Under the pieces are notes generated by a model. The model was not told the origin of the DNA. It did not search any database and saw only the letters and a program-made list of their open reading frames with translations. This document shows positions 1 through 11,400 of a stretch of DNA of 64,000 bases, piece after piece. Where the stretch lies: positions 1 to 64,000 of the forward strand of contig CDMY01000312.1 of assembly GCA_001179505.1 (NCBI GenBank), read 5' to 3'. The position numbers were made by a program, and so were the translations under genes. The stretch comes from Vitrella brassicaformis CCMP3155 (taxonomy: Eukaryota > Protista > Chromerida). Numbering within the stretch: the first letter of the stretch is position 1; each line of letters starts with the position of its first letter.

Positions 1-1152
1 ATCAGCTGCAGGTGTGCGAGGCCATTTCTTAGCACGATGTACACAGCACATACCAACCCCCTCAACCAGGTGCGGAGCCCACGGTTGGCCAGTGCATCCC
101 ACGGCACCGTCGACCAGTCTGTCTCTGCGCAGTCAGAAGGTTAGAGTGAGGACAAGAAAGCCAGAAGATGCATGCAGGCAGACAGCCACACCTGTTCTTT
201 GCCTCCCTCTCATTGTGTATATGCAGGTGGTGTCGTGACCGAGCCATTCCGGCCGCTGTGGCCGAGCAATCAGCAGCATCCCGCCCTCCGGCGGCGTTCT
301 TCTCCATCCTCAACGGCCATCAGAAACCCAGGTGGGAGGGTGGGGACACTGCCCACGTGCCATCTATCACTCGACCATGGCCATGGCCGTGTCCATTCAC
401 CCCCGTATCAGATAAGGAGGAGGGGCAGAAGGAGGGGTGATGTGCTTTTGTGCCAGATGCTAAGATGGTGGTGGAGCCTTCGCCTGCAGCATCTGCAACG
501 GCCGCGCCACCGCCTCTGGTGAGCGACACTCATTGACACCCATCCATTCATCCGTGCCCAAATACATGCCCCTGTCTGTGTTTCCTCCAGCTGATCGTGA
601 AGGAGAGTTGGGGCTAGTCGTCAGCGTCTTCATAGCGCTCGACGAGCATACCGCGATCGATCGGTACAACGAGTGGCTGGTCCAGGGAGGGCCTTCGGTC
701 AGCAAGCATGCACCTTGTTGGCCATCAGCATACCAGCTGCTTGTGTTTGCTTGTATGCCTGTCAGGCTCCTTGATAGAGGAGATGTGATAGCTTCGGCGA
801 GCCATCACTTCACGCAGCCTTCCTGTGCCCAGTTGCCGAAGTGCCCGCAAGCGTTGGACAGCAGAGAGCAGGTAGAATACCACCACACCCCACTGCTGTC
901 TACGCTTGCACGGATGTGTGCGCCGCTGCCATGCAGGGGTATGAGTCGGGGGAGTCGGTGAACGTTTCTATCACTGGCGTCGTGAATCTGCAGCGCCACA
1001 GCGTGCAGATCGACTCGGGAGACGATGCGCGCCTTCTCCCCACCCCCACCCACTGGCGGGTCAGTGCACTAATGTCTCTCGTCTTCTTGCGTGCACCTTC
1101 ACCATCCCCTCGTCGTCTTTGCGCCTCTGCTCTCCTGCGCCTCCTCAGGTGA
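1..1152 (+). CDS. 3' part of a multi-exon hypothetical protein that starts before the window
   Basis: Plus-strand acceptors (tgcag, gccag, tccag, gtcag at ~226, 457, 589, 767, 936) open exons such as DREGELGLVVSVFIALDEHTAIDRYNEWLVQGGPS, LLDRGDVIASASHHF and GYESGESVNVSITGVVNLQRH. No family recognised. Confidence 0.45.
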
Positions 1153-1771
1153 GGGTGGTTTATTGGCGGCCCTTCCATGCAGCGCAAGTGCACGTGGCTG
1201 CAGCAGCAATGGGGCTACATAGATAGATAGCTACATGGATGGATGAGAGCAGAGGTGGACTGCTCAATGATGTCTGCGGATGTAGGCCTCTGCATTCTCG
1301 TGTGTGTGTGTATGGCTGTGTGAGTAAGGGGTGGTAAGAGAGTGAGATCGAACCGAGGAGACCGAGGAGACAGCAGAGACGGTGCAATCTGAATGAAAGC
1401 TCAGTGTCCGAGACATGCATGAGCCTCCAAACATGTCGTACCATGACACCCCAAGTACCAGGGCTCCGCGCCCGGTGGTGCTCCTTTTAGTTTGTTGCAT
1501 GGGTGGATGCGATGGTCTGCAAGGGTATATGGAGCTGGACAGTGCTCACACGAGATGAACAAACAGGACTGCAGGTGTGTGTGTGTGTGTGTGTGGTGTG
1601 TTCTGTGAGCAATCACACGGCCATTCACAGAAGCATGGAAGTAACGCTCAACCAGGAGTTCAAGTCTGCCGAATCCTTGGCATGTCTCATGCAGCCCAGC
1701 AACCAGCTACTGCCCTTCTCCCCCCCCCTCTTCAGCCTTCGCGCCTCTGATTCATGAAGTGACAAACCATG

Positions 1772-3843
1772 TCATGGCAGCATGCCATGGTCCTTCATCC
1801 AGTTGCGCTGCCTCAACACCTGGTAGGCGAATTTGAAGTAGTGCACGTTGGTGTATCTCAGCTGACTGGCGAAGCCATTCCACCAGGGGAAAAACTGCTC
1901 ACACACCTACACATGTACACACACGATGTAGACACACGATGATGCCATATAGTCCATCGTACCTCGCTGTTGATGTCCTTGAGATCCGGATAGTTGGCCA
2001 TGTTGTGCACGCCCCAACACCTTGGCCTCGTGTGGCCAGACTGGTGCACGCGATCGATCACAAAGCGATCCTTGGCCAAGGCCCTCACCTCCTCGGTGGC
2101 CCCCGGCTTCGCTGCCTCGATGCAGAAGTGGTCGGACAGATGACACGCATCATCGTATATGATGGTCATCGGCTCGACGATCCCCATGTCCAGCAGCCGC
2201 CGGCGAAACTTCGCCAGCATCCAGGCGACCTGTGTCGTGCTCTCTGGACGAGGCAACACACAAAAGTCTGCCACGCGACCGCAGGGATGGATGGCCACGA
2301 GGATCCCGCTGGTCTTGTCTCCGATCCTCACGACGCTCATCGACCCTGGTTTGTCCTTGTGCGTGTTGCAGTCCTGGGAGCAAACACAGCCAATCAGGCA
2401 AAAGAGAAATAGGCATACGAGATATTCACGTGAGTCATCTCTGACCTCGGAGCGGTGTTGATGTGCGTCTGCTTCCTGCGGCTTGGACCCCCTTGCCGCC
2501 TGCTCCTGAGGTATCGATTTCCAAAGCAATAGGCCAGAGCGTCTGTTGCTTGTGTTCTCTGCATGCCCTGCAAGCATTCGTACCGACTGTCCTCTTTCAG
2601 CCGCAGGGGCAACCACTGGGGCAGCCATGGAAACCTGCCCCCATTCCAGTGAGACAAGAAAGGGCGCTCTAGCACTTTGGTGCGTATAAGCCCGAGGTAC
2701 TTGCCTGTCCGGCGCCCATGTTGTCCTCCATTGGGTCCACATTCATGGGAGCGCAGTCTGCTGACGACGCAGATACTCCGGTCGCCTGCACAGCCAATGA
2801 ATGCACTGAAAAACCCCTTGAAAGGCGTCCAGTGTAGCTTCCGTACCTGATGCGATCCACCGTTGTGCTGTGGCGCAGCCACCGATGCGAGACAAGACAT
2901 GTCGGTGTCACCGTTCACCAGTACCACACAAGACATCTCGGTATCACCACCACAGCCCGGCGCCTGCCAGAAGTGTGACAGGGCCATGATGGTGGAGACG
3001 GCTAATGGGCCGACAGGCAACCACATACCTTCGCAGACACGCCGCTGTCGCCCGACTTGAGCAGCTGCAACACCGAAGAGGAAGATACATTGCTGCTGGA
3101 GTCTGTGTTTGCTGGTGGGCCGTACACAAACCTCTAGGATCCTGTCGGTCTCTGCCTCTTGGTCTGTGTCGCCTTCACGAGTAACTCCTCCCTGCACTCA
3201 CCCATTCACCCCACGATGTTGTTTTTCGTCGGGCTGGCAGAAAAGCTCGTCTGTCCTTACCCCAGCTGCCTTGCTCTTTGCGCCTTTCTGACGTGCGTGT
3301 CTCCTCGCCAGTCGAGCACGCCCCACGTGTCGCTCAAGGAGGCGATGACGCTCCTGCTCTTTCACCGCAGAGCATGTCTTGCCGTCCTCAAAGACGAAAG
3401 AGTCGATATCCGCGTCACACAGGATGTCCCGTGCACTGACCTCTGGCGCAGCCGGCGGGCGAGACGGAATCAGCTGTCGCTCTGCCTTTCTTGCTATCGC
3501 CAACTCTTCCGCACTAGAGAGTGACGCAAGCTGATGGCGCTGCTGGACGGGCGCGCGCCGCTTCTTCGGTGGTGAGCAGGATCGATCGGGGGCGTTCCTT
3601 TTCAGGCCCGCCCTGCGACCGCCATGATAAAAGGTTAGGGCCATCTCCGCCCCGTCCTTTTTCACCAGCTCCTCGACCGGCGCCCAGTGGCTCTGTCGCT
3701 CTTCGAGTCCCTGCCCATCTATCGTGTGGTACCGATAGTAGGGCCTCATGTCCCCCGTCTCTCGATCCCGCCGCTCCTCATGGCCGGTCACGCTGAGGAC
3801 AAAGGCGCCCGCGATGGATGGCCGAGGCTGGCCGTCCTCTCCT
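1772..3843 (-). mobile_element. Spliced KDZ (Kyakuja-Dileera-Zisupton) transposase-domain gene with an upstream chromodomain-like segment
   Basis: Exon 1963-2373 encodes DCNTHK...TSGILVAIHPCGRV...ESTTQVAWML...TIIYDDACHL...FVIDRVHQSGHTRPRC...DLKDINSE. It splices in phase 0 to exon 1772-1906, VCEQFFPWWNGFASQLRYTN...*. These match the KDZ motifs YDxAC, IDxxH-x2-GH-x-C and NxExCEQ. Upstream exons join in compatible phases up to ~3843. Confidence 0.82.
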
Positions 3844-3899
3844 AGGTGCTTACGTAGACATGTGTGAAGTCAAGAGTCAATGTGTGATTCAACTGACCA

Positions 3900-6170
3900 G
3901 CTGGCCAGACGCATCTATCTCGTCAGTGACATCACTATCGTCGTCCTGGAAACCAGTCTGCTGGACCACACACAAGCAGACACAATGTGAGCAAGGGAAT
4001 GTCTGAGAGTGTGTCATGATACCCCTCTGTGGCCGCGTCCCTCCCTCCTACGGCCGCGTGGGGGCGCCCGTCGATCGGCGGGAAGTGGCGCATCGTCCTC
4101 CTCAAACAACTGTCCACATGACTCTACCTGCAAACAGGAAATGGCCGTTGTCGCCCATGGATTCACTTGTGTGTGAATATATGCGTACGCTGTCCGCTGC
4201 TTCTGCTGTTCCAGTGCCCCCTTCCCTGCGCGATGGGGGCCTGTCGAATCGGCCCTGCAATCGCTGAGCTAATTTCTAGTCCTCCTCCTCCATCTCATCC
4301 GTCTGGTTGATGTCGTCATGCACTTGCCTGGCATATTCCTCGTCGAACTGCAGGAGACACATAGAAGGGGAATGCCGACAGATGGGAGTGATGCAGCTGA
4401 TGTGAGTTGTGGGTTATATATATGCGTCCAACCTACCACTGGATTCGCCACGTAGCCTAAGGGTGAGGCAGCCGCTGCAGCAGCAGCTGCTGCCGGTGCA
4501 GCTGGTGCCGATGACGGTGACGGGTGGGGGTTCTGAAGGGCAGCCACCGAAACAGACACATGGATGACCGTCAAGACAGCCGTGTATGGAGCAATGTGTG
4601 TGCGTACTTGGGGGGGTTGATAGCCACCACCGCCACCACCACCACCAGCAGCAGCAGCAGCAGCGGCAGCGGTAGCTCCAGATGAGGGTGCGTTGGAACC
4701 TCCATGTCTCTTGAAAACGACACCAACATAGGCAGGAAGAAGCAGCCATTGCGAGACATAGCAGCGGCAGGTTTGGTGGCCACATGATGTCGTGTGTATG
4801 TGTGGAGGATGCCCACCGGTTGTGCGTGTGGTGCGGGGTGGCCGCCAAACAACACAGAATCGCCCGGAGCAGCCCCACCGCCCACCTTTGCCTGCACACA
4901 TCCATCGAACAACAACGACGTGAATGGAGTTTGTCCGCCATTGAATGGGGATAAGGTGGGGAGGGGGGAGGGGAGAGCGTATGTGATGATGCCTACGTGA
5001 GGGGAGTGGGGTGAAGGTTTGGGGGAGGCCTCGCCTACACCAGTTCCACCAATCTGCGCACACACCAAGACAGCCAACAACAACAACGCGCCCGATGACA
5101 TGGGTCTGTTTGGATCGTTTTCGTGTGCACAGTGGTGTGCAGGGCCGTACCTGCGCGCCAGTGTTCGCTTCAGCTCTGCGAAACCCATAGATCTTCATCT
5201 TAGGCCCCTGCATGCGTCCAATACATTCACCACTTATACTCACATACGTACATGTGCATCAGTGCGTCTTGGCGAGTCATGTGAGTGGGAAGGACGTACC
5301 TGACCCCTGTCTGCCGCTTCCTGTGGTTGGTCGTCGTCGCGCTCTAGGTCAATGTGGATGGGCTCCCGCGTCTGCGCTACGCCCCCAGACACACCCTTCC
5401 CTGCTCGGCTGCCGGTGCCCCTGCTGCTACCGGCCAGCCCAGACGCCAAACCGCCACGACCTATCCCGTTTGACACACGAACAGGGGGATGCAGGAAAGG
5501 AAATGAATGGTGTTGTGTGACGTACCGAATGGTGCAGACCGGCCGAGACCAAACATCTGTGCATCAACCGACACATGCAACAAAAAAGGGTGAATGGATG
5601 TGGTGTTGGGGGTGGGGAGCCTCTGGTGTAAGATACCTGTTGGTGTTTAGAGGGGGCCAAGTTCCAATCGTACGCCGGCCCCTGCTGTTGGTGCGGGTGA
5701 CTACTCGACAACATCTGCTCCGACCCAATGTCGTCCCGCTGCACAGCCACACATCCATCCATACAAATAGCAGAGTGAACCATGGGTGAGGTTGTGTGCC
5801 GCTGGATGGGGGTCAGCTTCGCGTACCTGCTCGGCCTCGTAGAGAGGGGAAGAGACCTCCTGTTGACCCACAACAGACAAGCCCCACACATACATACACG
5901 CATCCACCACGCAATGGATGGAAGATCTGTGCAAGCACGTGCGCACCATGGGAGCATACGGAACATCAGGTTGGTCCTGGGATGACGAAGCAGCGGCGGC
6001 GGCGGCAGCAGCAGGAGCTGGTGGCGACGGCACGGCCGACGGGGACGCCAAACCGCTGTCACGACCACCCTGAAAGGCGACACCCACATCGACCAGCAAA
6101 GAGACGATTCATAGAGTCGGTGAGGGAGGATTTGGTGTTGTCGACTTACCTGCCCTTGGTCCGTAGAGGT
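3900..6170 (-). CDS. Upstream low-complexity exons of the same KDZ locus, with one in-frame TAG at 4276-4278; the 5' end is lost in the gap
   Basis: A series of short GT-AG exons, mostly phase 0, encodes Ala/Gly/Pro/Gln-rich sequence (e.g. GGRDSGLASPSAVPSPPAPAAAA, REPIHIDLERDDDQPQE, FDEEYARQVHDD...EED*KLAQRLQ). They lead in frame into the 3843 exon. Confidence 0.55.
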
Positions 6171-6239
6171 GTGGTACGATGCAGTACGACCCACCTGCAA
6201 CACACACCGCAAACAGGCACACACGCACCACACCAATCC

Positions 6240-6539
6240 NNNNNNNNNNNNNNNNNNNNNNNNNNNNNNNNNNNNNNNNNNNNNNNNNNNNNNNNNNNNN
6301 NNNNNNNNNNNNNNNNNNNNNNNNNNNNNNNNNNNNNNNNNNNNNNNNNNNNNNNNNNNNNNNNNNNNNNNNNNNNNNNNNNNNNNNNNNNNNNNNNNNN
6401 NNNNNNNNNNNNNNNNNNNNNNNNNNNNNNNNNNNNNNNNNNNNNNNNNNNNNNNNNNNNNNNNNNNNNNNNNNNNNNNNNNNNNNNNNNNNNNNNNNNN
6501 NNNNNNNNNNNNNNNNNNNNNNNNNNNNNNNNNNNNNNN
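6240..6539. other. Assembly gap (300 N)
   Basis: Run of N. Confidence 0.99.
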
Positions 6540-6829
6540 CGACCCCCCTCGGGGGGGCTCCCCCCATTCCGGGTTCGAGACCCCCCGGTCCCCCATTGGG
6601 GGCCGGGGGAGGGTACGGCCCCCATGCATGCCTGAAATGCGGCGTCTCCCCCAGAGAGACGCCAAGCAACCCCCACCTCGCGCCCCCACACCGTGCCGTT
6701 CGGCCGTTGAGCCGCCATTCGAAAGCCGAGCCCCATGTCCACTTTTTGATTCACCACGCCACGCCAAGGCAGGGCGGCCTCTTCGTCCTTGGCAAGACGT
6801 GTTCCAGGACGAAAGACGATCAGTCCACG

Positions 6830-8224
6830 ATGACGAAGCGTGCCCGCACAGCCGCGAACGCGTCGGCGGCCTCCTCGGCCGCCTCCCACACGCAAAGCCG
6901 CTTCCCCGACGTGCTTGGTGAAGCGGGCATTGTTTTGGCGGACTTCCTCTCTCCAGCGGACCTGTATGCCCTCCGGCGCACCTGTCCCGCGGGGAGACAT
7001 CAGCCCGGCGACGTCTACTTCATCCACCGCATCAACCGCTGCATCGCCGACAAGCAGATAGGGGGCTTGCTGACATTCGACGCCAACTACCAGCCGGGGG
7101 ATGGCGAGGACATGCCGCGTGTGGCGTATCTGATGCAGCTGCTGTACGTGCTGGACGAGGGCGGCCAGTGGGGTCTGTGGATGGGCCCTCTGCGCATCGC
7201 CCGACACGGACGGCTGGTCCAGTCGCTGCCCATCAGTGTGAGGCCGGCGGACGTGCGGCGTGTGGGGTCCAAAGCGGTGTTCGACGGCCGGGCGGACAGC
7301 CTCAAGCAGTACAGCCTCTTCGGCCACCTGATGGGGCAAGATGGGGTGGTGGCCCTGAGACAGATCGACGGCATCGAGCAGCTGGGTGAGACGGTGGTGA
7401 CCGTCTACACTCAGGAGACCCTCCCCGCCGACCATGAGTTCGCCACTTCGTTCGACCCGACGGACCCCATCGTCAGAGGTGGGCGAAAAAACACCAGCAC
7501 AGTGGCACGACAAGGCGATGCTAATGTGTGGAGCATGGCTTGTGTGGGTTCCTTAGTCAACAATGAGGTGGATTATGCGAGTTTCCGACAGCTGGCCATC
7601 TTGCGGTGAGGCAGGCGACGCCAGCCATGCCACTCGCACACAAGCAGACGACACATAACCTGTCTGCTGTGTGTATGCGCCGCCTCGTTTCTTCGCCTAG
7701 TTTTCCGTGTGAGGAGCAGCTGATGTGTCATCGCACGGACCTCACCGGGGACAGCTCACGAGCTGCCCTGGCTAACAGACTGCTGACACAAGTAGGGACT
7801 ACAGACGTCTACGCTTACCTACTGTCAATCAACTAACTTATTGCTGCAGGCGGCCATTCCCTGGGGTCGCCAGACCAGAATGGTGAGCATCGACGACCAT
7901 CGCCGGCGGAGTGGCTCCATCTACCTGTGCGGAGAGGGCCCGAACGACAGCTTTGCTGCCCGCGTCCACATGACACGCCAGCCAACCTTCTGGACAACTG
8001 TCCTGTACACCACTGAGGCCCCCAGACCGCAAAAGGAGGGATCCCTTCGTTTCCCCCGGACAGCGAAGCTGACTGCAACCTGTCTCGGGCGCAACGACAA
8101 GGAGCGGCTCTTCGATCATTTGAGGTATGAGCAGCTGTCGTTTAGGATCTGCCGGAAAAGCACGAATGCAGTCGCCCCGAAAGCAAAGGCCAAGGCCAAG
8201 GCCAAGCCCAAAGCAGCACCGTAG
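6830..8224 (+). CDS. Lineage-expanded Vitrella-type hypothetical protein, multi-exon
   Basis: ATG at 6830 (MTKRARTAA...). Core LLYVLDEGGQWGLW..LPISVRPADVRRVGSKAVFDGRADSLKQYSLFGHLMG and C-terminal IYLCGEGPNDSFAARV..LYTTEAP resemble the paralogous segments at 50134-52055. TAG stop at 8222-8224. Confidence 0.7.
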
Positions 8225-8408
8225 GCAACAGGAGACACGCAGAAGTGGGGGGTGGGGGGTGGGTGAGGTGGGTGGGGCGATAGCTAGATGGATAAGTCGG
8301 TCGAGTGCCTTGTCGTGTTTGGACTTGACTGTACGGTGCGTGAGAGAGTCAGTCCATGCAGTGAAGGGGACTGATCGATGTGGCCAAACACGTCGCGTAA
8401 GTCAGCAG

Positions 8409-11400
8409 TCAGGAAGTGGCCAATGGGTTCAACGGGTTCATGCTTCTGCAGTGCCTGCGTGAGGACTGTATGTGTTCGAGGGTCTGTCTGGTCTGGTGTC
8501 ACTCACGTCTTTGTTTTGTGGTAGCCATGACAGACAGTCTCATCGTCATGTGATATGATGGACATGAAAGACAAACATGTCAAACCGTCACTGACTGTGA
8601 CTTCACATGCAATTCAGCCATCCACCTGTCCGTCCATCTGTCCACCCATCTGTCTGTCTGTCTGTCTGCCTGTCTGCCGCCTCTCACTGCCAATGCACAA
8701 TCGCCGTGTGCGGGTGGTGCAGTATGTGCAGCCACATGTCATTGCCATTGAAGAACCGGTCACTGCCCACCACCACCAAGTGGCGCCTGGCACGGCTGAG
8801 GGCCACATTGGTGCGGCGGGGGTCCTCACAGAAGTCCTCGCTCGACGACTTGCCGCCGCTGTTGCGGCCCCCCGACCGGGCGAAGAGGCCCCCGCCGCCG
8901 ATGCTCTTGCGCTTGGGCGGCTGAGATGCGGCGGGATTGGCACTGGCAGCAGTCGGGCTGGTGGTGGTGTTGTTGTTTCGTGTGTGTGAAGTGGATGATG
9001 GGAATTCTCTGCGGACGGTGGATAGGAAAATGATGTCCTTCTCGGCGCCCTGGAATGCGTCGACCGTCGAGACCTGAGGGACGACACACATGCACAGCGA
9101 ATGGGGCATTGTTGTGGTGTCTCTTCTGTGCTCTCGTGAATGGATCAAACCTGGATGTGAGCTCTGCCTTGGAATCGCGCCTTGACCCTCTGGTCGATCT
9201 CAAAGGCTTGCTCTGCGCCCACACACCACACACCATATGCATATGCGCACACACACAGCCCGAGATGTGTCTGCAGGCCGCCGGCGGCTTACTTCTGTAC
9301 AGCGATATGACTCCGATGGACGCCCCCTCTGGCCGGTTCTCTCTCTGGAGCGACTGCAGTGCATCCTCGATCATGTTGCAGATGGCCTGCGCCTCGTACT
9401 CGTTGCGATAAGACACACCGTTCCTAACCTCCCTGTGCCAATGACCCCACACACCACACACACACGTTTTTTACCCACCTTCGCGAATGCATTCTTGTTG
9501 TGTCTCTGGCTGCTTGCATGCGCACTTGTTCTGTGGGTGGTTGGCCTGCAGGACGACAGCGCTGAGCGGCGCCCAGTTGTCGATGATGGGGGCACGGTCG
9601 CTCTCAGTGACGCCGTCCCACAGCTCGCCCTCGCCGTAGAAGAGCTCGCGGCAGAGACACGACAGGTGGGGGTGGCAGCGGTACTGCGTGCGCATGGGGA
9701 GGGGGGCGATGGGAGGGGGAGGGGCCATGTGTGCCGACGGCAGGGGGGCACCGTCCTCTGGGTCTTCCATCCAAAGACGGTCGAACAGAGACATGCAGAG
9801 ATTGCTGTTGCCCTGCATTAGTGAGTGACATATGGATGGACACACACGGAGATGTGGGGGTGGGTGGGTGACCTTAGTGATGGGAGGTAGTTGGTTTGGG
9901 TCTCCGATGGCCATCCACCGCAGAGCCCGGAAGCGCACGAGGACGGCGACCGACTGCGGCTCGATCAGCTGAGACGCCTCGTCGATGAACACAAACGGAC
10001 AGCTGCCCTCCAGCCTGTTCGGGCAGACCTGGATGGATTGATGTGTCTCTGTGTGTGTGTGTGTGTGTGTGGATGTGTGTGTGTGGATGCCGACCCGCCG
10101 AGCGCTTCGCTTTGCATGGCTGTGGCGCATGTGGTGGCGATGATACGAACACGGCCCTTCCAGTCCTGCACACACACAGACGGACACATGGATGCCCAAT
10201 CCCGCCCCTTCCTCTCCGTAAAACCACCTTGAGTTGGGGTGGGTATTTGCCCTGGTCGACGAGTGTCTTGAGCTGCAGCAGCTCCTGACGCAGCAACGCG
10301 TCAAGGTCCCCCCCACCCTGCTGCCCCTGCTGCTGCTGGCGGGCCCGATTGCTGCTGCTGCTGCTGCTGCTGCCAGTGCCCAGCCTGAGGTTGAGGGCCT
10401 CGGTGAACTCCTGCAGACCCCTCTTCCTGTCCGTAACCGCACTCGCCGCATACCTGATCCACACACACACACACACACACATGGGTGGGTGGTGGGTGGA
10501 TTGGTGTCTTGTGTTGGTGCATTGAGGTCACTTGAGGACGTTGGGTTTCATCTCCTTGGGTGAACCGATTCGGATGAGCTGCTCTTGGGGCATGCCGATG
10601 GCGGCCAGCTTCTCCACCACGCCGTCGACCGCCACGTTGGTGTTGCACACGAGCAGGATCTTGCTCTTGCACCCCTCGGCACACAGCACCCTGATCGACC
10701 CGACCCACACACCCAGGTAGGTAGGCGTCCATCCATGATCCATGCCAGCACCCATGGCTCCGTTACTTGGAGAGGAACATGAGAGCCGCCGCCAGCAGGG
10801 TGGACTTGCCGCTACCGAACACGCCGTGGACCAGCAGGCAGGGCGCCTCGGGGGTCCCGGCCTCGTCAGCACTCCTGCATGCTGCCGATGCTGCTGCTGC
10901 CGATGCGGCGGCTGCTGCTGCGGCTGCTGCAGACGACGATCGTGGGTTGTCATGGAGATCGTTCTCTACGTCGAAGTCATCGGGGTCCGCTGCAGCCGCT
11001 GCAATCTTGGCACGATCGAGGTCGTCATACTCAAACCTGACGACGGACGGCAAAAGGCGGAAATCGGAGTGCATTCAGGTGTTTGTCTGTCTCGATGGGG
11101 TGCGTGCGAACCAGTCGGCGATGGCCTGTATGACGCCAAGCTGGTCGGCGTTGAGGGTGGGTGAGTTGTAGGTGACCTCTTCAAGCAGCTCCTCCGCTCG
11201 GTAGCTCGTCACCTTCACCTGTGTGTGTGCACACAAACACACCGCACCACAGCCGTGGGCGAGGCTCTCTGTCTGATCGTGTGTAAGTGTGTGGCTCGTC
11301 TGTCTGTCTGTCTGTCTGTGTGGCTGACCAGCTCGAGTTGAGTGCACCAGGGGGAGGAGGAGGACGGAGACGCAGACGCGATGCTGAAGGAAGATACACA

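What the first reader, a model, noticed from the sequence alone, without database searches (positions are those of the whole stretch)
1772..6170. Intron-rich KDZ/Zisupton-type transposase fused to chromodomain-like and ubiquitin-binding-like motifs
Seen: one spliceable frame links a long disordered N-terminus, two MIU/UIM-like helices (FDEEYARQV; EED*KLAQRLQ, ~4250-4350), a chromo-like segment (FVLSVTGHEERRDRETGDMRPYYRYHTIDGQGLEERQSHWAPVEEL, ~3680-3810) and a KDZ core that still carries the conserved YDDAC, DRVH..GH..C and NSEVCEQ residues. Known: KDZ transposases pick up accessory domains (Zisupton carries a SUMO protease; fungal KDZ elements associate with TET/JBP genes), and chromodomains direct integration in chromoviruses. 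Inference: this is either a DNA transposon that reads chromatin and ubiquitin marks or a domesticated host gene, given its many host-style microsatellite introns.
Basis: partly seen in the sequence, partly recalled or inferred. Interest (0 to 1): 0.8.

Follow-up and report, generated by a model that had tools for sequence, protein, structure and literature searches.

The report
Transposase-derived KDZ gene in Vitrella
This is a transcribed, nine-exon gene of the alga-like alveolate Vitrella brassicaformis that descends from a KDZ-type DNA transposase; it looks like a kept remnant rather than a working transposon, and it is not fused to the ubiquitin-motif region upstream.

Summary
They lie in the last two exons of a minus-strand gene with CDS 3749..1772, nine exons and 479 aa. 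The product is the public uncharacterised protein CEM01858.1 of Vitrella brassicaformis.

The "one spliceable frame" is not supported. RNA contigs show stops at TAG 4278-4276, TGA 3891-3889 and TGA 3872-3870. The disordered and UIM-like part belongs to a separately annotated upstream ORF. Three RNA assemblies break at about 3758-3781, just upstream of the ATG.

KDZ ancestry is solid:
- Pfam KDZ scores just under its cut-off, while the paralogue passes it.
- phmmer finds relatives that pass the Pfam KDZ cut-off.
- The core folds with pLDDT above 90, and its nearest predicted folds are all KDZ clusters.

It does not look like an autonomous element:
- It has no CxC zinc modules.
- Asn212 sits where relatives, and by inference integrases, have the first catalytic Asp.
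- I found no terminal inverted repeats.
- Only one old paralogue turned up (core dS about 1.5, dN/dS 0.21).

The chromo-like segment gets weak structural support only, and its first strand lies upstream of the start codon. The UIM/MIU claim fails.

My verdict is a probably domesticated or fossil KDZ-derived gene. It is a new member of a known kind and of modest interest. First readers of this scan also noted KDZ-like genes on two other pieces of this genome; I did not test those.

The parts
3261..3749 (-). Coding exon 1 (residues 1-163), starting at ATG 3749-3747. The exon itself runs 5' to at least 3781 in KDZ-only RNA contigs and to 3957 in merged contigs.
3132..3191 (-). Coding exon 2 (60 nt, phase 0).
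   Evidence: Spliced RNA contigs; exon-wise translation matches P0001.
3029..3064 (-). Coding exon 3 (36 nt, phase 0).
2847..2963 (-). Coding exon 4 (117 nt, residues 196-234). It holds the degenerate 'GC...VVLVNGDTD..C' remnant of the family's 'GC..hhhDG(N/G)xK..C' first strand at 2927-2901. The Asn212 codon is at 2915-2913.
   Evidence: Strand 208-214 in the AF2 model. Fold alignments start at residues 203-205. MAFFT column match. My own HMM of that strand does not score this segment.
2705..2785 (-). Coding exon 5 (81 nt), followed by a GC-AG intron at 2704-2635.
2584..2634 (-). Coding exon 6 (51 nt).
2446..2505 (-). Coding exon 7 (60 nt).
1963..2373 (-). Coding exon 8 (411 nt, residues 299-435). 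This is the KDZ core: CNTHK, PCG, ES, YDDAC (2157-2143), DRVH..GH....C (2055-2017) and NSE.
1772..1906 (-). Coding exon 9 (residues 436-479, starting VCEQ) plus the stop TGA at 1774-1772. The 3' UTR continues to at least about 1720.
3657..3809 (-). Chromo-like stretch. The first strand is coded at about 3803-3768, upstream of the ATG. The second and third strands and the helix lie inside the CDS.
   Evidence: AF2 single-sequence model with mean pLDDT 64. VIA-align top hits are chromo and chromoshadow domains with Z at most 4.4. No Pfam or profile support.
3870..3872 (-). In-frame TGA that closes the KDZ reading frame upstream of the ATG.
4189..4347 (-). Last coding exon of the separately annotated upstream ORF. 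FDEEYARQV...EEED is followed by TAG at 4278-4276. The 'KLAQRLQ' motif lies after that stop.
3889..4127 (-). Spliced transcript segments downstream of that TAG (exon 4127-4023, intron 4022-3958, then exon from 3957). They stay open in the same frame for 86 codons, up to the second stop TGA 3891-3889.
4540..5164 (-). Block of the upstream gene that is 82% identical in DNA to the paralogous locus (L005 10219-10825, partly repeated in tandem there).

Best explanation
The locus holds an expressed, intron-containing Vitrella gene that descends from a KDZ (Kyakuja-Dileera-Zisupton) DNA transposase. It now behaves like a host gene, either domesticated or a long-kept remnant, and not like an autonomous transposon.

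Shown here:
- The 479-aa product keeps the C-terminal KDZ RNase H-like core with its conserved Cys/His cluster and acidic residues.
- It lacks the CxC zinc modules that full-length relatives carry.
- It exists as two anciently diverged, selectively constrained paralogues.
- It is a separate ORF from the upstream low-complexity gene.

Inferred:
- Asn212 occupies the position of the first catalytic Asp. The protein therefore most likely cannot carry out full cut-and-paste transposition, and acts instead through nucleic-acid or chromatin binding, or at most as a crippled nuclease.
- The N-terminal chromo-like piece is a truncated relic.
For: Gene model:
- Spliced RNA contigs give nine exons. Their exon-wise translation equals the public protein P0001 = CEM01858.1 / A0A0G4EU97, which also occurs as a 'complete' MMETSP ORF.

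KDZ ancestry:
- ESM features are nearest fungal KDZ clusters, score 0.95-0.96.
- Pfam KDZ gives E 4e-5, 23.9 bits on the whole protein and 25.9 bits on residues 290-479, against a cut-off of 26.6. The paralogue scores 30.5-32.5 bits.
- 104 phmmer hits were found, and 55 of 105 aligned proteins match KDZ.
- All nine nearly invariant family residues are present.
- The core has pLDDT above 90.
- It shows an RNase H-like fold, Z up to 8.8 against integrase, Mu, IstA and Hermes cores.
- All ten listed nearest ESM Atlas folds are KDZ, CxC or Chromo+C2H2 clusters, or unnamed ones. The best TM normalised by the matched model is 0.73.

Not an autonomous element:
- No CxC Pfam hit was found, and no tblastn trace of the relatives' N-terminal halves appears anywhere in the 64-kb window.
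- Asn212 aligns with the Asp of the family's DG(N/G)xK strand. By range arithmetic it also aligns with HIV/ASV/MVV integrase D64/D64/D66.
- No terminal inverted repeats were found, and there is a single copy in the window.
- Only one paralogue has E below 1e-10 among 1.84 billion representatives, and no further relative appeared in the word search, whose length filter (263-838 aa) hides shorter kin and also hid the known paralogue's cluster representative.
- Paralogue core: dS 1.5, dN/dS 0.21.
- The last intron position is shared with the paralogue.

Separate from the upstream ORF:
- Stops lie between the two ORFs.
- The genome annotation calls two genes.
- Three RNA assemblies break at 3758-3781, and contig depth is 3-4 times higher over the KDZ exons.
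Against: - The Asn212 assignment rests on a medium-confidence strand (pLDDT about 65), a MAFFT alignment of a low-complexity stretch, and arithmetic on alignment ranges. My own HMM of that strand does not score the segment. Nearby Asp214 and Asp216 could substitute.
- Purifying selection is also expected between diverged active elements.
- KDZ elements can be 10-30 kb (PMC12477816), so inverted repeats could lie beyond the contig start or the assembly gap.
- Genome-wide copy number was not measured. Two other untested first-reader notes report KDZ-like genes elsewhere in this genome.
- No orthologue in another species was found, so there is no evidence of syntenic conservation.
- Some RNA contigs physically join upstream exons to the KDZ ORF, and the same is seen at the paralogous locus.
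Confidence: 0.6

Rival explanations
1. It is a decaying fossil: a transposase fragment that is transcribed by chance and has no function of its own.
For: - The CxC modules and the canonical first-strand motif are missing.
- The chromo-like fold is cut by the start codon.
- About 250 residues of the product are predicted disordered.
- The upstream neighbour carries a premature-looking stop.
Against: - The nine-exon ORF is intact and correctly spliced.
- All nearly invariant core residues are kept.
- dN/dS is 0.21 at dS about 1.5 against a paralogue that also has an intact ORF and transcript.
- The core is modelled at pLDDT above 90.
Confidence: 0.2
2. It is the transposase gene of a still mobile, possibly very large, KDZ element whose ends lie outside the region examined. 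The upstream low-complexity gene would be an accessory passenger.
For: - Upstream block and KDZ core occur together at two loci.
- KDZ elements are often giant and carry accessory genes (PMC12477816).
- The second Asp, the Cys/His cluster and the CEQ Glu are kept.
- Other KDZ-like notes exist for this genome (untested).
Against: - Homology between the two loci ends at the stop codon and at the upstream block, with no shared flanks or inverted repeats.
- The copies differ by dS about 1.5.
- There is no CxC DNA-binding module, and Asn replaces the first Asp.
- The neighbours look like ordinary intron-bearing genes that overlap its transcript.
Confidence: 0.1
3. One reading: one long protein joins the disordered, UIM-like region, a chromodomain and the KDZ core, made through a minor splice form and read-through of the TAG.
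For: - After TAG 4278-4276 the frame stays open for 86 codons across two spliced exons.
- A hypothetical 49-nt GT..AG intron (3897-3849) would put that frame in frame with the KDZ ORF and would include the first chromo-like strand.
- Contigs from three samples join these exons.
Against: - The TAG is present in all DNA and RNA runs laid, with no variant listed.
- No contig splices the 49-nt stretch, and its acceptor is a poor AAG. The better YAG acceptor is out of frame.
- The same kind of contig also merges a convergent gene on the other strand (L002), so merging is not proof of one mRNA.
- Assemblies break at 3758-3781.
Confidence: 0.05

Closest known systems
KDZ (Kyakuja-Dileera-Zisupton) transposases, Pfam PF18758
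   Same: - The core is homologous: the CNTxK, PCG, ES, YDDAC, DRxH..H....C and N(T/S)..CEQ motifs are present.
- It has the RNase H-like fold.
- Its nearest predicted structures are KDZ clusters.
   Different: - It scores just under the Pfam cut-off (23.9 and 25.9 bits against 26.6).
- It has no CxC1-6 zinc cluster.
- Asn replaces the Asp of the DG(N/G)xK strand.
- No inverted repeats were found, and only two old copies are known.
- The gene has eight host-type introns.
Chromodomain-bearing KDZ relatives (for example P0025 with Chromo and C2H2 fingers; amphioxus P0004/P0108; rotifer P0005)
   Same: - These are the best sequence and fold neighbours of the core.
- The Vitrella gene has a chromo-like stretch as well.
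   Different: - In these relatives a Pfam-detectable chromodomain lies between the DG(N/G)xK strand and the CNTxK motif, about 65-75 residues before the core.
- In Vitrella the chromo-like piece lies N-terminal of the strand remnant, about 255 residues before the core.
- It is not detected by any profile and is cut by the start codon.
Domesticated DDE transposase genes in general (from my own knowledge, not tested here: SETMAR/Metnase, THAP9, PGBD genes, RAG1)
   Same: - It is low-copy, lacks ends, is expressed, and its transposase core is under purifying selection.
- The Metnase transposase domain appears among the fold matches.
   Different: - No orthologue or synteny in another species is shown.
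- No function is known.
- It descends from KDZ. I do not know of a described domesticated gene from that superfamily; this rests on my own knowledge and on library searches.

Membership tests
KDZ transposase domain (PF18758) | Significant sequence homology to KDZ cores. | tested here: met
   - Pfam gives E 4e-5, but 23.9 and 25.9 bits, just under the curated 26.6.
- phmmer gives E 9e-10 to P0003 and similar hits that do pass the cut-off.
- 55 of 105 aligned proteins match KDZ.
- The paralogue scores 30.5-32.5 bits.
KDZ transposase domain (PF18758) | Conserved core residues of the family. | tested here: met
   C329, E342, Y371, D372, C375, D405, H408, H412 and C417 are all present, and so is VCEQ.
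KDZ transposase domain (PF18758) | RNase H-like fold closest to KDZ models. | tested here: met
   - The core has pLDDT above 90.
- Z is up to 8.8 against integrase and transposase cores.
- The nearest Atlas neighbours are KDZ and CxC clusters.
Autonomous KDZ transposon | First catalytic Asp in the 'DG(N/G)xK' strand. | tested here: not met
   The aligned segment reads VVLVNGDTD, with Asn212 at the Asp column. Integrase D64 maps to residue 212 by range arithmetic. The alignment is of modest reliability.
Autonomous KDZ transposon | N-terminal CxC zinc-chelating modules. | tested here: not met
   There is no CxC Pfam hit in P0001, whereas 5 relatives have CxC5. tblastn finds no trace of the relatives' N-terminal halves in the window.
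Autonomous KDZ transposon | Terminal inverted repeats, target-site duplication, multiple similar copies. | tested here: inconclusive
   No inverted repeats were found in 1-9000, and only one diverged paralogue is known. The contig start and an assembly gap limit the view, and the whole genome was not searched.
Chromodomain (PF00385) | Match to a chromodomain sequence profile. | tested here: not met
   There is no Pfam hit even at E up to 5. A family-specific chromo HMM gives no hit. hhalign gives probability 0.3%.
Chromodomain (PF00385) | Three-stranded sheet packed against a C-terminal helix. | tested here: inconclusive
   - A single-sequence AF2 model (mean pLDDT 64) gives strands 14-25, 32-42 and 52-55 and helix 56-62.
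- By VIA-align about half of the top 50 matches are chromo or chromoshadow domains, but Z is at most 4.4.
- Foldseek finds none.
- Within the full protein the region has pLDDT below 50.
Chromodomain (PF00385) | The whole domain lies inside the translated ORF. | tested here: not met
   The first strand is coded at about 3803-3768, upstream of ATG 3749. No in-frame ATG lies between the TGA at 3872-3870 and 3749.
UIM / MIU ubiquitin-binding motifs | Profile match, and a place in the same polypeptide as the KDZ core. | tested here: not met
   No Pfam hit was found on either piece. FDEEYARQV is the tail of the upstream ORF, and KLAQRLQ follows its TAG stop. By direct reading, the Ser of the UIM consensus is His here.
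Domesticated transposase gene | Low copy number, expressed, purifying selection. | tested here: met
Domesticated transposase gene | Orthologues at a conserved position in related species. | tested here: inconclusive
   Outside Vitrella no hit has E below 1e-10. Twenty of the weaker hits were looked up and none is from Chromera. Synteny could not be examined.

The most novel reading that the evidence does not exclude
Vitrella keeps a two-gene module at two loci: a G/A/P-rich repeat gene followed directly by a KDZ-derived ORF. The KDZ cores have diverged to dS about 1.5, yet a 0.6-kb upstream block is held at 82% identity, and transcript contigs of both loci run from the upstream gene into the KDZ ORF. 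This could be an exapted, co-transcribed remnant of a chromodomain-bearing KDZ element. Such elements would be a clade of DNA transposons with a chromodomain inserted inside the catalytic fold, and so possibly chromatin-targeted.
Probability: 0.12. Interest if true: 0.55.

Novelty: new member of a known kind. Interest (0 to 1): 0.3.

Why it matters
It adds a transposase-derived gene from the little-studied KDZ superfamily in a chromerid, a free-living relative of apicomplexan parasites. It corrects a tempting but wrong fusion model. The protein is already in public databases as 'uncharacterised', so the practical gain is an annotation: a KDZ-derived protein that is probably catalytically impaired.

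The wider lead is that many marine relatives carry a true chromodomain next to the KDZ core. That would be worth a dedicated look as a possible case of chromatin-guided DNA transposition.

Tried and rejected
- Pfam on raw ORF pieces found nothing, because the domain is split over two exons and diluted by intron translation. It appears only on the full public protein.
- The 267-aa frame-1 ORF at 3197-2397 looked like a KDZ N-terminal half. RNA shows it is not the coding frame.
- A phmmer search and a self-built iterative chromo HMM found no match to the Vitrella N-terminus. hhalign was not significant.
- A self-built HMM of the family's first strand scored other relatives strongly but did not score P0001.
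- Foldseek against the PDB was weak for both models. VIA-align was more informative.
- The repeat search found only low-complexity inverted matches.
- The introns are not related to each other, so they are not an introner family.
- The word search with the core found only the protein itself. Its length filter hides the 229-aa paralogue.
- The founding KDZ paper (PMC3918813) is not held, so whether chromo-KDZ fusions were already described could not be checked.
- I never joined exons myself for any search. The spliced product was studied only as the public protein P0001, which the representative search returned and which equals the exon-wise translation.
Full report
**Where and what.** The window starts at position 1 of contig CDMY01000312.1 of Vitrella brassicaformis CCMP3155. 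The finding lies on the minus strand. An assembly gap (N run 6240-6539) sits just upstream.

**Checking the observation.**
- YDDAC at 2157-2143.
- DRVH..GH....C at 2055-2017.
- NSE|VCEQ, split by a 56-nt intron (1962-1907).
- The FVLSV...HWAPVEEL stretch at about 3809-3672.
- FDEEYARQV and EED-stop-KLAQRLQ around 4347-4255.

A first Pfam scan of eight raw ORF pieces gave no KDZ, Chromo or UIM hit at E up to 1. A language-model look-up of the core exon pointed to fungal KDZ clusters at 0.95-0.96.

**The gene model from RNA.** Contigs of three RNA-like runs, laid on 1600-6230, show GT-AG joints that a DNA run lacks. Transcript contigs from three other samples map the same way.
- The exons are 3957-3261, 3191-3132, 3064-3029, 2963-2847, 2785-2705, 2634-2584, 2505-2446, 2373-1963 and 1906-~1720.
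- One intron (2704-2635) is GC-AG.
- Translating exon by exon in the frame set by the stop TGA 1774-1772 gives an ORF open from TGA 3872-3870, with its first ATG at 3749.
- An exhaustive HMMER search with the core exon returned a 479-aa public protein (P0001 = CEM01858.1 / A0A0G4EU97, also a 'complete' MMETSP ORF) that equals this exon-wise translation.
The spliced product was examined only through P0001.
- The long frame-1 ORF at 3197-2397 is not coding. The real exons there are short and lie in other frames.
- All seven internal coding exons are multiples of three, and all introns are phase 0.

**Not one frame.**
- The genome annotation calls a separate 337-aa gene at 6736-4276. Its last exon ends ...FDEEYARQVHDDINQTDEMEEED, followed by TAG 4278-4276.
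- On the transcript the same frame then stays open for 86 codons over two more spliced exons and stops at TGA 3891-3889. The KDZ ORF is in another frame.
- A hypothetical 49-nt intron (3897-3849) would bring the two frames together. It has a poor AAG acceptor, and every contig keeps it unspliced. The better acceptor at 3843-3842 is out of frame.
- Some contigs join upstream exons to the KDZ ORF. One of them (L002) also runs on into a convergent plus-strand gene, so merging does not prove one mRNA.
- Three assemblies break at 3758-3781: X1 ends at 3781, X2 has a gap at 3758/3764, and L003 has an N scaffold there. Contig depth is 3-4 times higher over the KDZ exons.
- I read this as a separate KDZ mRNA that starts a few tens of bases before the ATG.

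**KDZ ancestry.**
- Pfam KDZ matches P0001 at E 4e-5 with 23.9 bits, and 25.9 bits for residues 290-479, just under the 26.6 cut-off. It covers profile positions 83-202 of 217.
- The Vitrella paralogue (P0002/P0106, CEM22088.1, contig CDMY01000550.1) scores 30.5-32.5 bits.
- Of 105 aligned proteins, 55 match KDZ, 11 Chromo and 5 CxC5.
- All nine nearly invariant family residues are present in P0001.
- AlphaFold2 with that alignment models residues 300-479 at pLDDT above 90. Most of residues 1-298 are below 50.
- The model aligns to retroviral integrase, Mu, IstA, Tn5, Hermes and Mos1 cores, with Z up to 8.8.
- All ten listed nearest ESM Atlas models are KDZ, CxC or Chromo+C2H2 clusters, or unnamed ones.

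**Signs that it is not a working transposase.**
- Long relatives carry a 'GC...hhhDG(N/G)xK..R..C' segment 78-215 residues before the CNTxK motif.
- In P0001 the aligned segment, 88 residues before CNTHK, reads GC...VVLVNGDTD..C, with Asn212 in the Asp column and Asp216 in the Lys column.
- AlphaFold makes 208-214 a strand (pLDDT about 65). The fold alignments begin at residues 203-205 and pair them with integrase residues 56-59. By simple counting this puts HIV D64, ASV D64 and MVV D66 on residue 212. This is an inference. My HMM of that segment does not score P0001.
- No CxC module is detected. tblastn with 40 long relatives finds nothing outside the two core exons in the whole window, apart from one marginal hit (E 0.002, 33 residues at 3055-2957) that I took for low complexity without inspecting it.
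- No terminal inverted repeats flank the locus.
- The window has one copy.
- Only the paralogue has E below 1e-10, and the word search found nothing more.
- Between the paralogues the core has dS about 1.5 and dN/dS 0.21, and the last intron is at the same place in both.

Together these facts fit a long-resident, constrained, transposase-derived gene.

**The chromo-like segment.**
- No sequence method supports it: Pfam, a family-specific chromo HMM that finds about 20 relatives, and hhalign at probability 0.3%.
- A single-sequence AlphaFold model of 79 codons (3842-3606) gives three strands and a helix, with pLDDT up to 87 locally and a mean of 64.
- By VIA-align its best matches are Chd1, HP1, Oxpecker, Chp1, CHD4/6, Rhino, SUV39H1 and cpSRP43 chromo or chromoshadow domains. 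About half of the top 50 are of this kind, but Z is at most 4.4. Foldseek lists none.
- The first strand is coded upstream of the ATG, probably near or beyond the mRNA start.
- In relatives the true chromodomain sits between the DG(N/G)xK strand and CNTxK. Here the piece lies N-terminal of the strand remnant.
- I rate it a possible relic, at about one chance in three.

**UIM/MIU.** These motifs are not supported. There is no profile hit. One motif is the C-terminal tail of the other ORF, and the other follows its stop codon.

**The paralogous locus.**
- Besides the two core exons (68-69% DNA identity), the loci share a 0.6-kb block of the upstream gene at 82% identity. The block is similar in all three frames and is partly repeated in tandem at the other locus.
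- The paralogue's transcript contig also runs from upstream-gene exons into a 229-aa KDZ ORF.
- The block is far less diverged than the coding core, which suggests gene conversion or a younger repeat. I could not resolve this.

**Verdict.** It is a new member of a known kind and of modest interest. The scan's first readers noted KDZ-like genes on two other pieces of this genome, which I did not test.

Noticed in passing
Relatives P0025, P0004/P0108, P0034, P0049, P0074, P0089 and others: About 20 relatives of the core carry a clear chromodomain placed between the 'DG(N/G)xK' strand and the 'CNTxK' motif. They come from marine metagenomes, amphioxus and a rotifer. Some also have C2H2 fingers. 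This may be a chromodomain inserted inside the KDZ catalytic fold. I could not check whether it has been described.
   Followed up: partly
window 4278-3889 (minus strand): The upstream ORF stops at TAG 4278-4276, yet the frame stays open for 86 more codons across two further spliced exons, to TGA 3891-3889. It looks like a recent nonsense change, or like introns in a 3' UTR.
   Followed up: partly
window 5164-4540 and L005 9841-10998: A 0.6-kb block of the upstream G/A/P-rich gene is 82% identical between the two paralogous loci, although the KDZ cores have dS about 1.5. The block is partly repeated in tandem in L005.
   Followed up: partly
window 6197 to 5683, and 6185: RNA-like contigs of two runs show a joint that goes back 515 bases, with 13 extra letters. 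They also carry a loose end at 6198 leading to unseen sequence beyond the assembly gap. All four runs read C where the window has T at 6185.
   Followed up: no
window 3749-1772: All seven internal coding exons are multiples of three and all eight introns are phase 0. The introns are 56-78 nt, unrelated to each other, and one is GC-AG (2704-2635).
   Followed up: partly
window 67-1772; L002 1920-3255: One transcript contig runs from the KDZ 3' end into the spliced exons of a convergent plus-strand gene, so the two genes' 3' ends overlap.
   Followed up: no
L005 10001-12394 (P0106, CEM22088.1): The public 426-aa model of the paralogue looks chimeric. Its N-terminus reads two tandem copies of the upstream block in different frames and removes stretches that the transcript contig L006 retains. 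UniRef names it 'ISXO2-like transposase', but Pfam finds only KDZ.
   Followed up: partly
window about 8684-9150 (minus strand): ORFs here carry superfamily-1 helicase motifs (DAFQG.E.D, NVALSRAR). They are part of a 1675-aa annotated neighbour.
   Followed up: no
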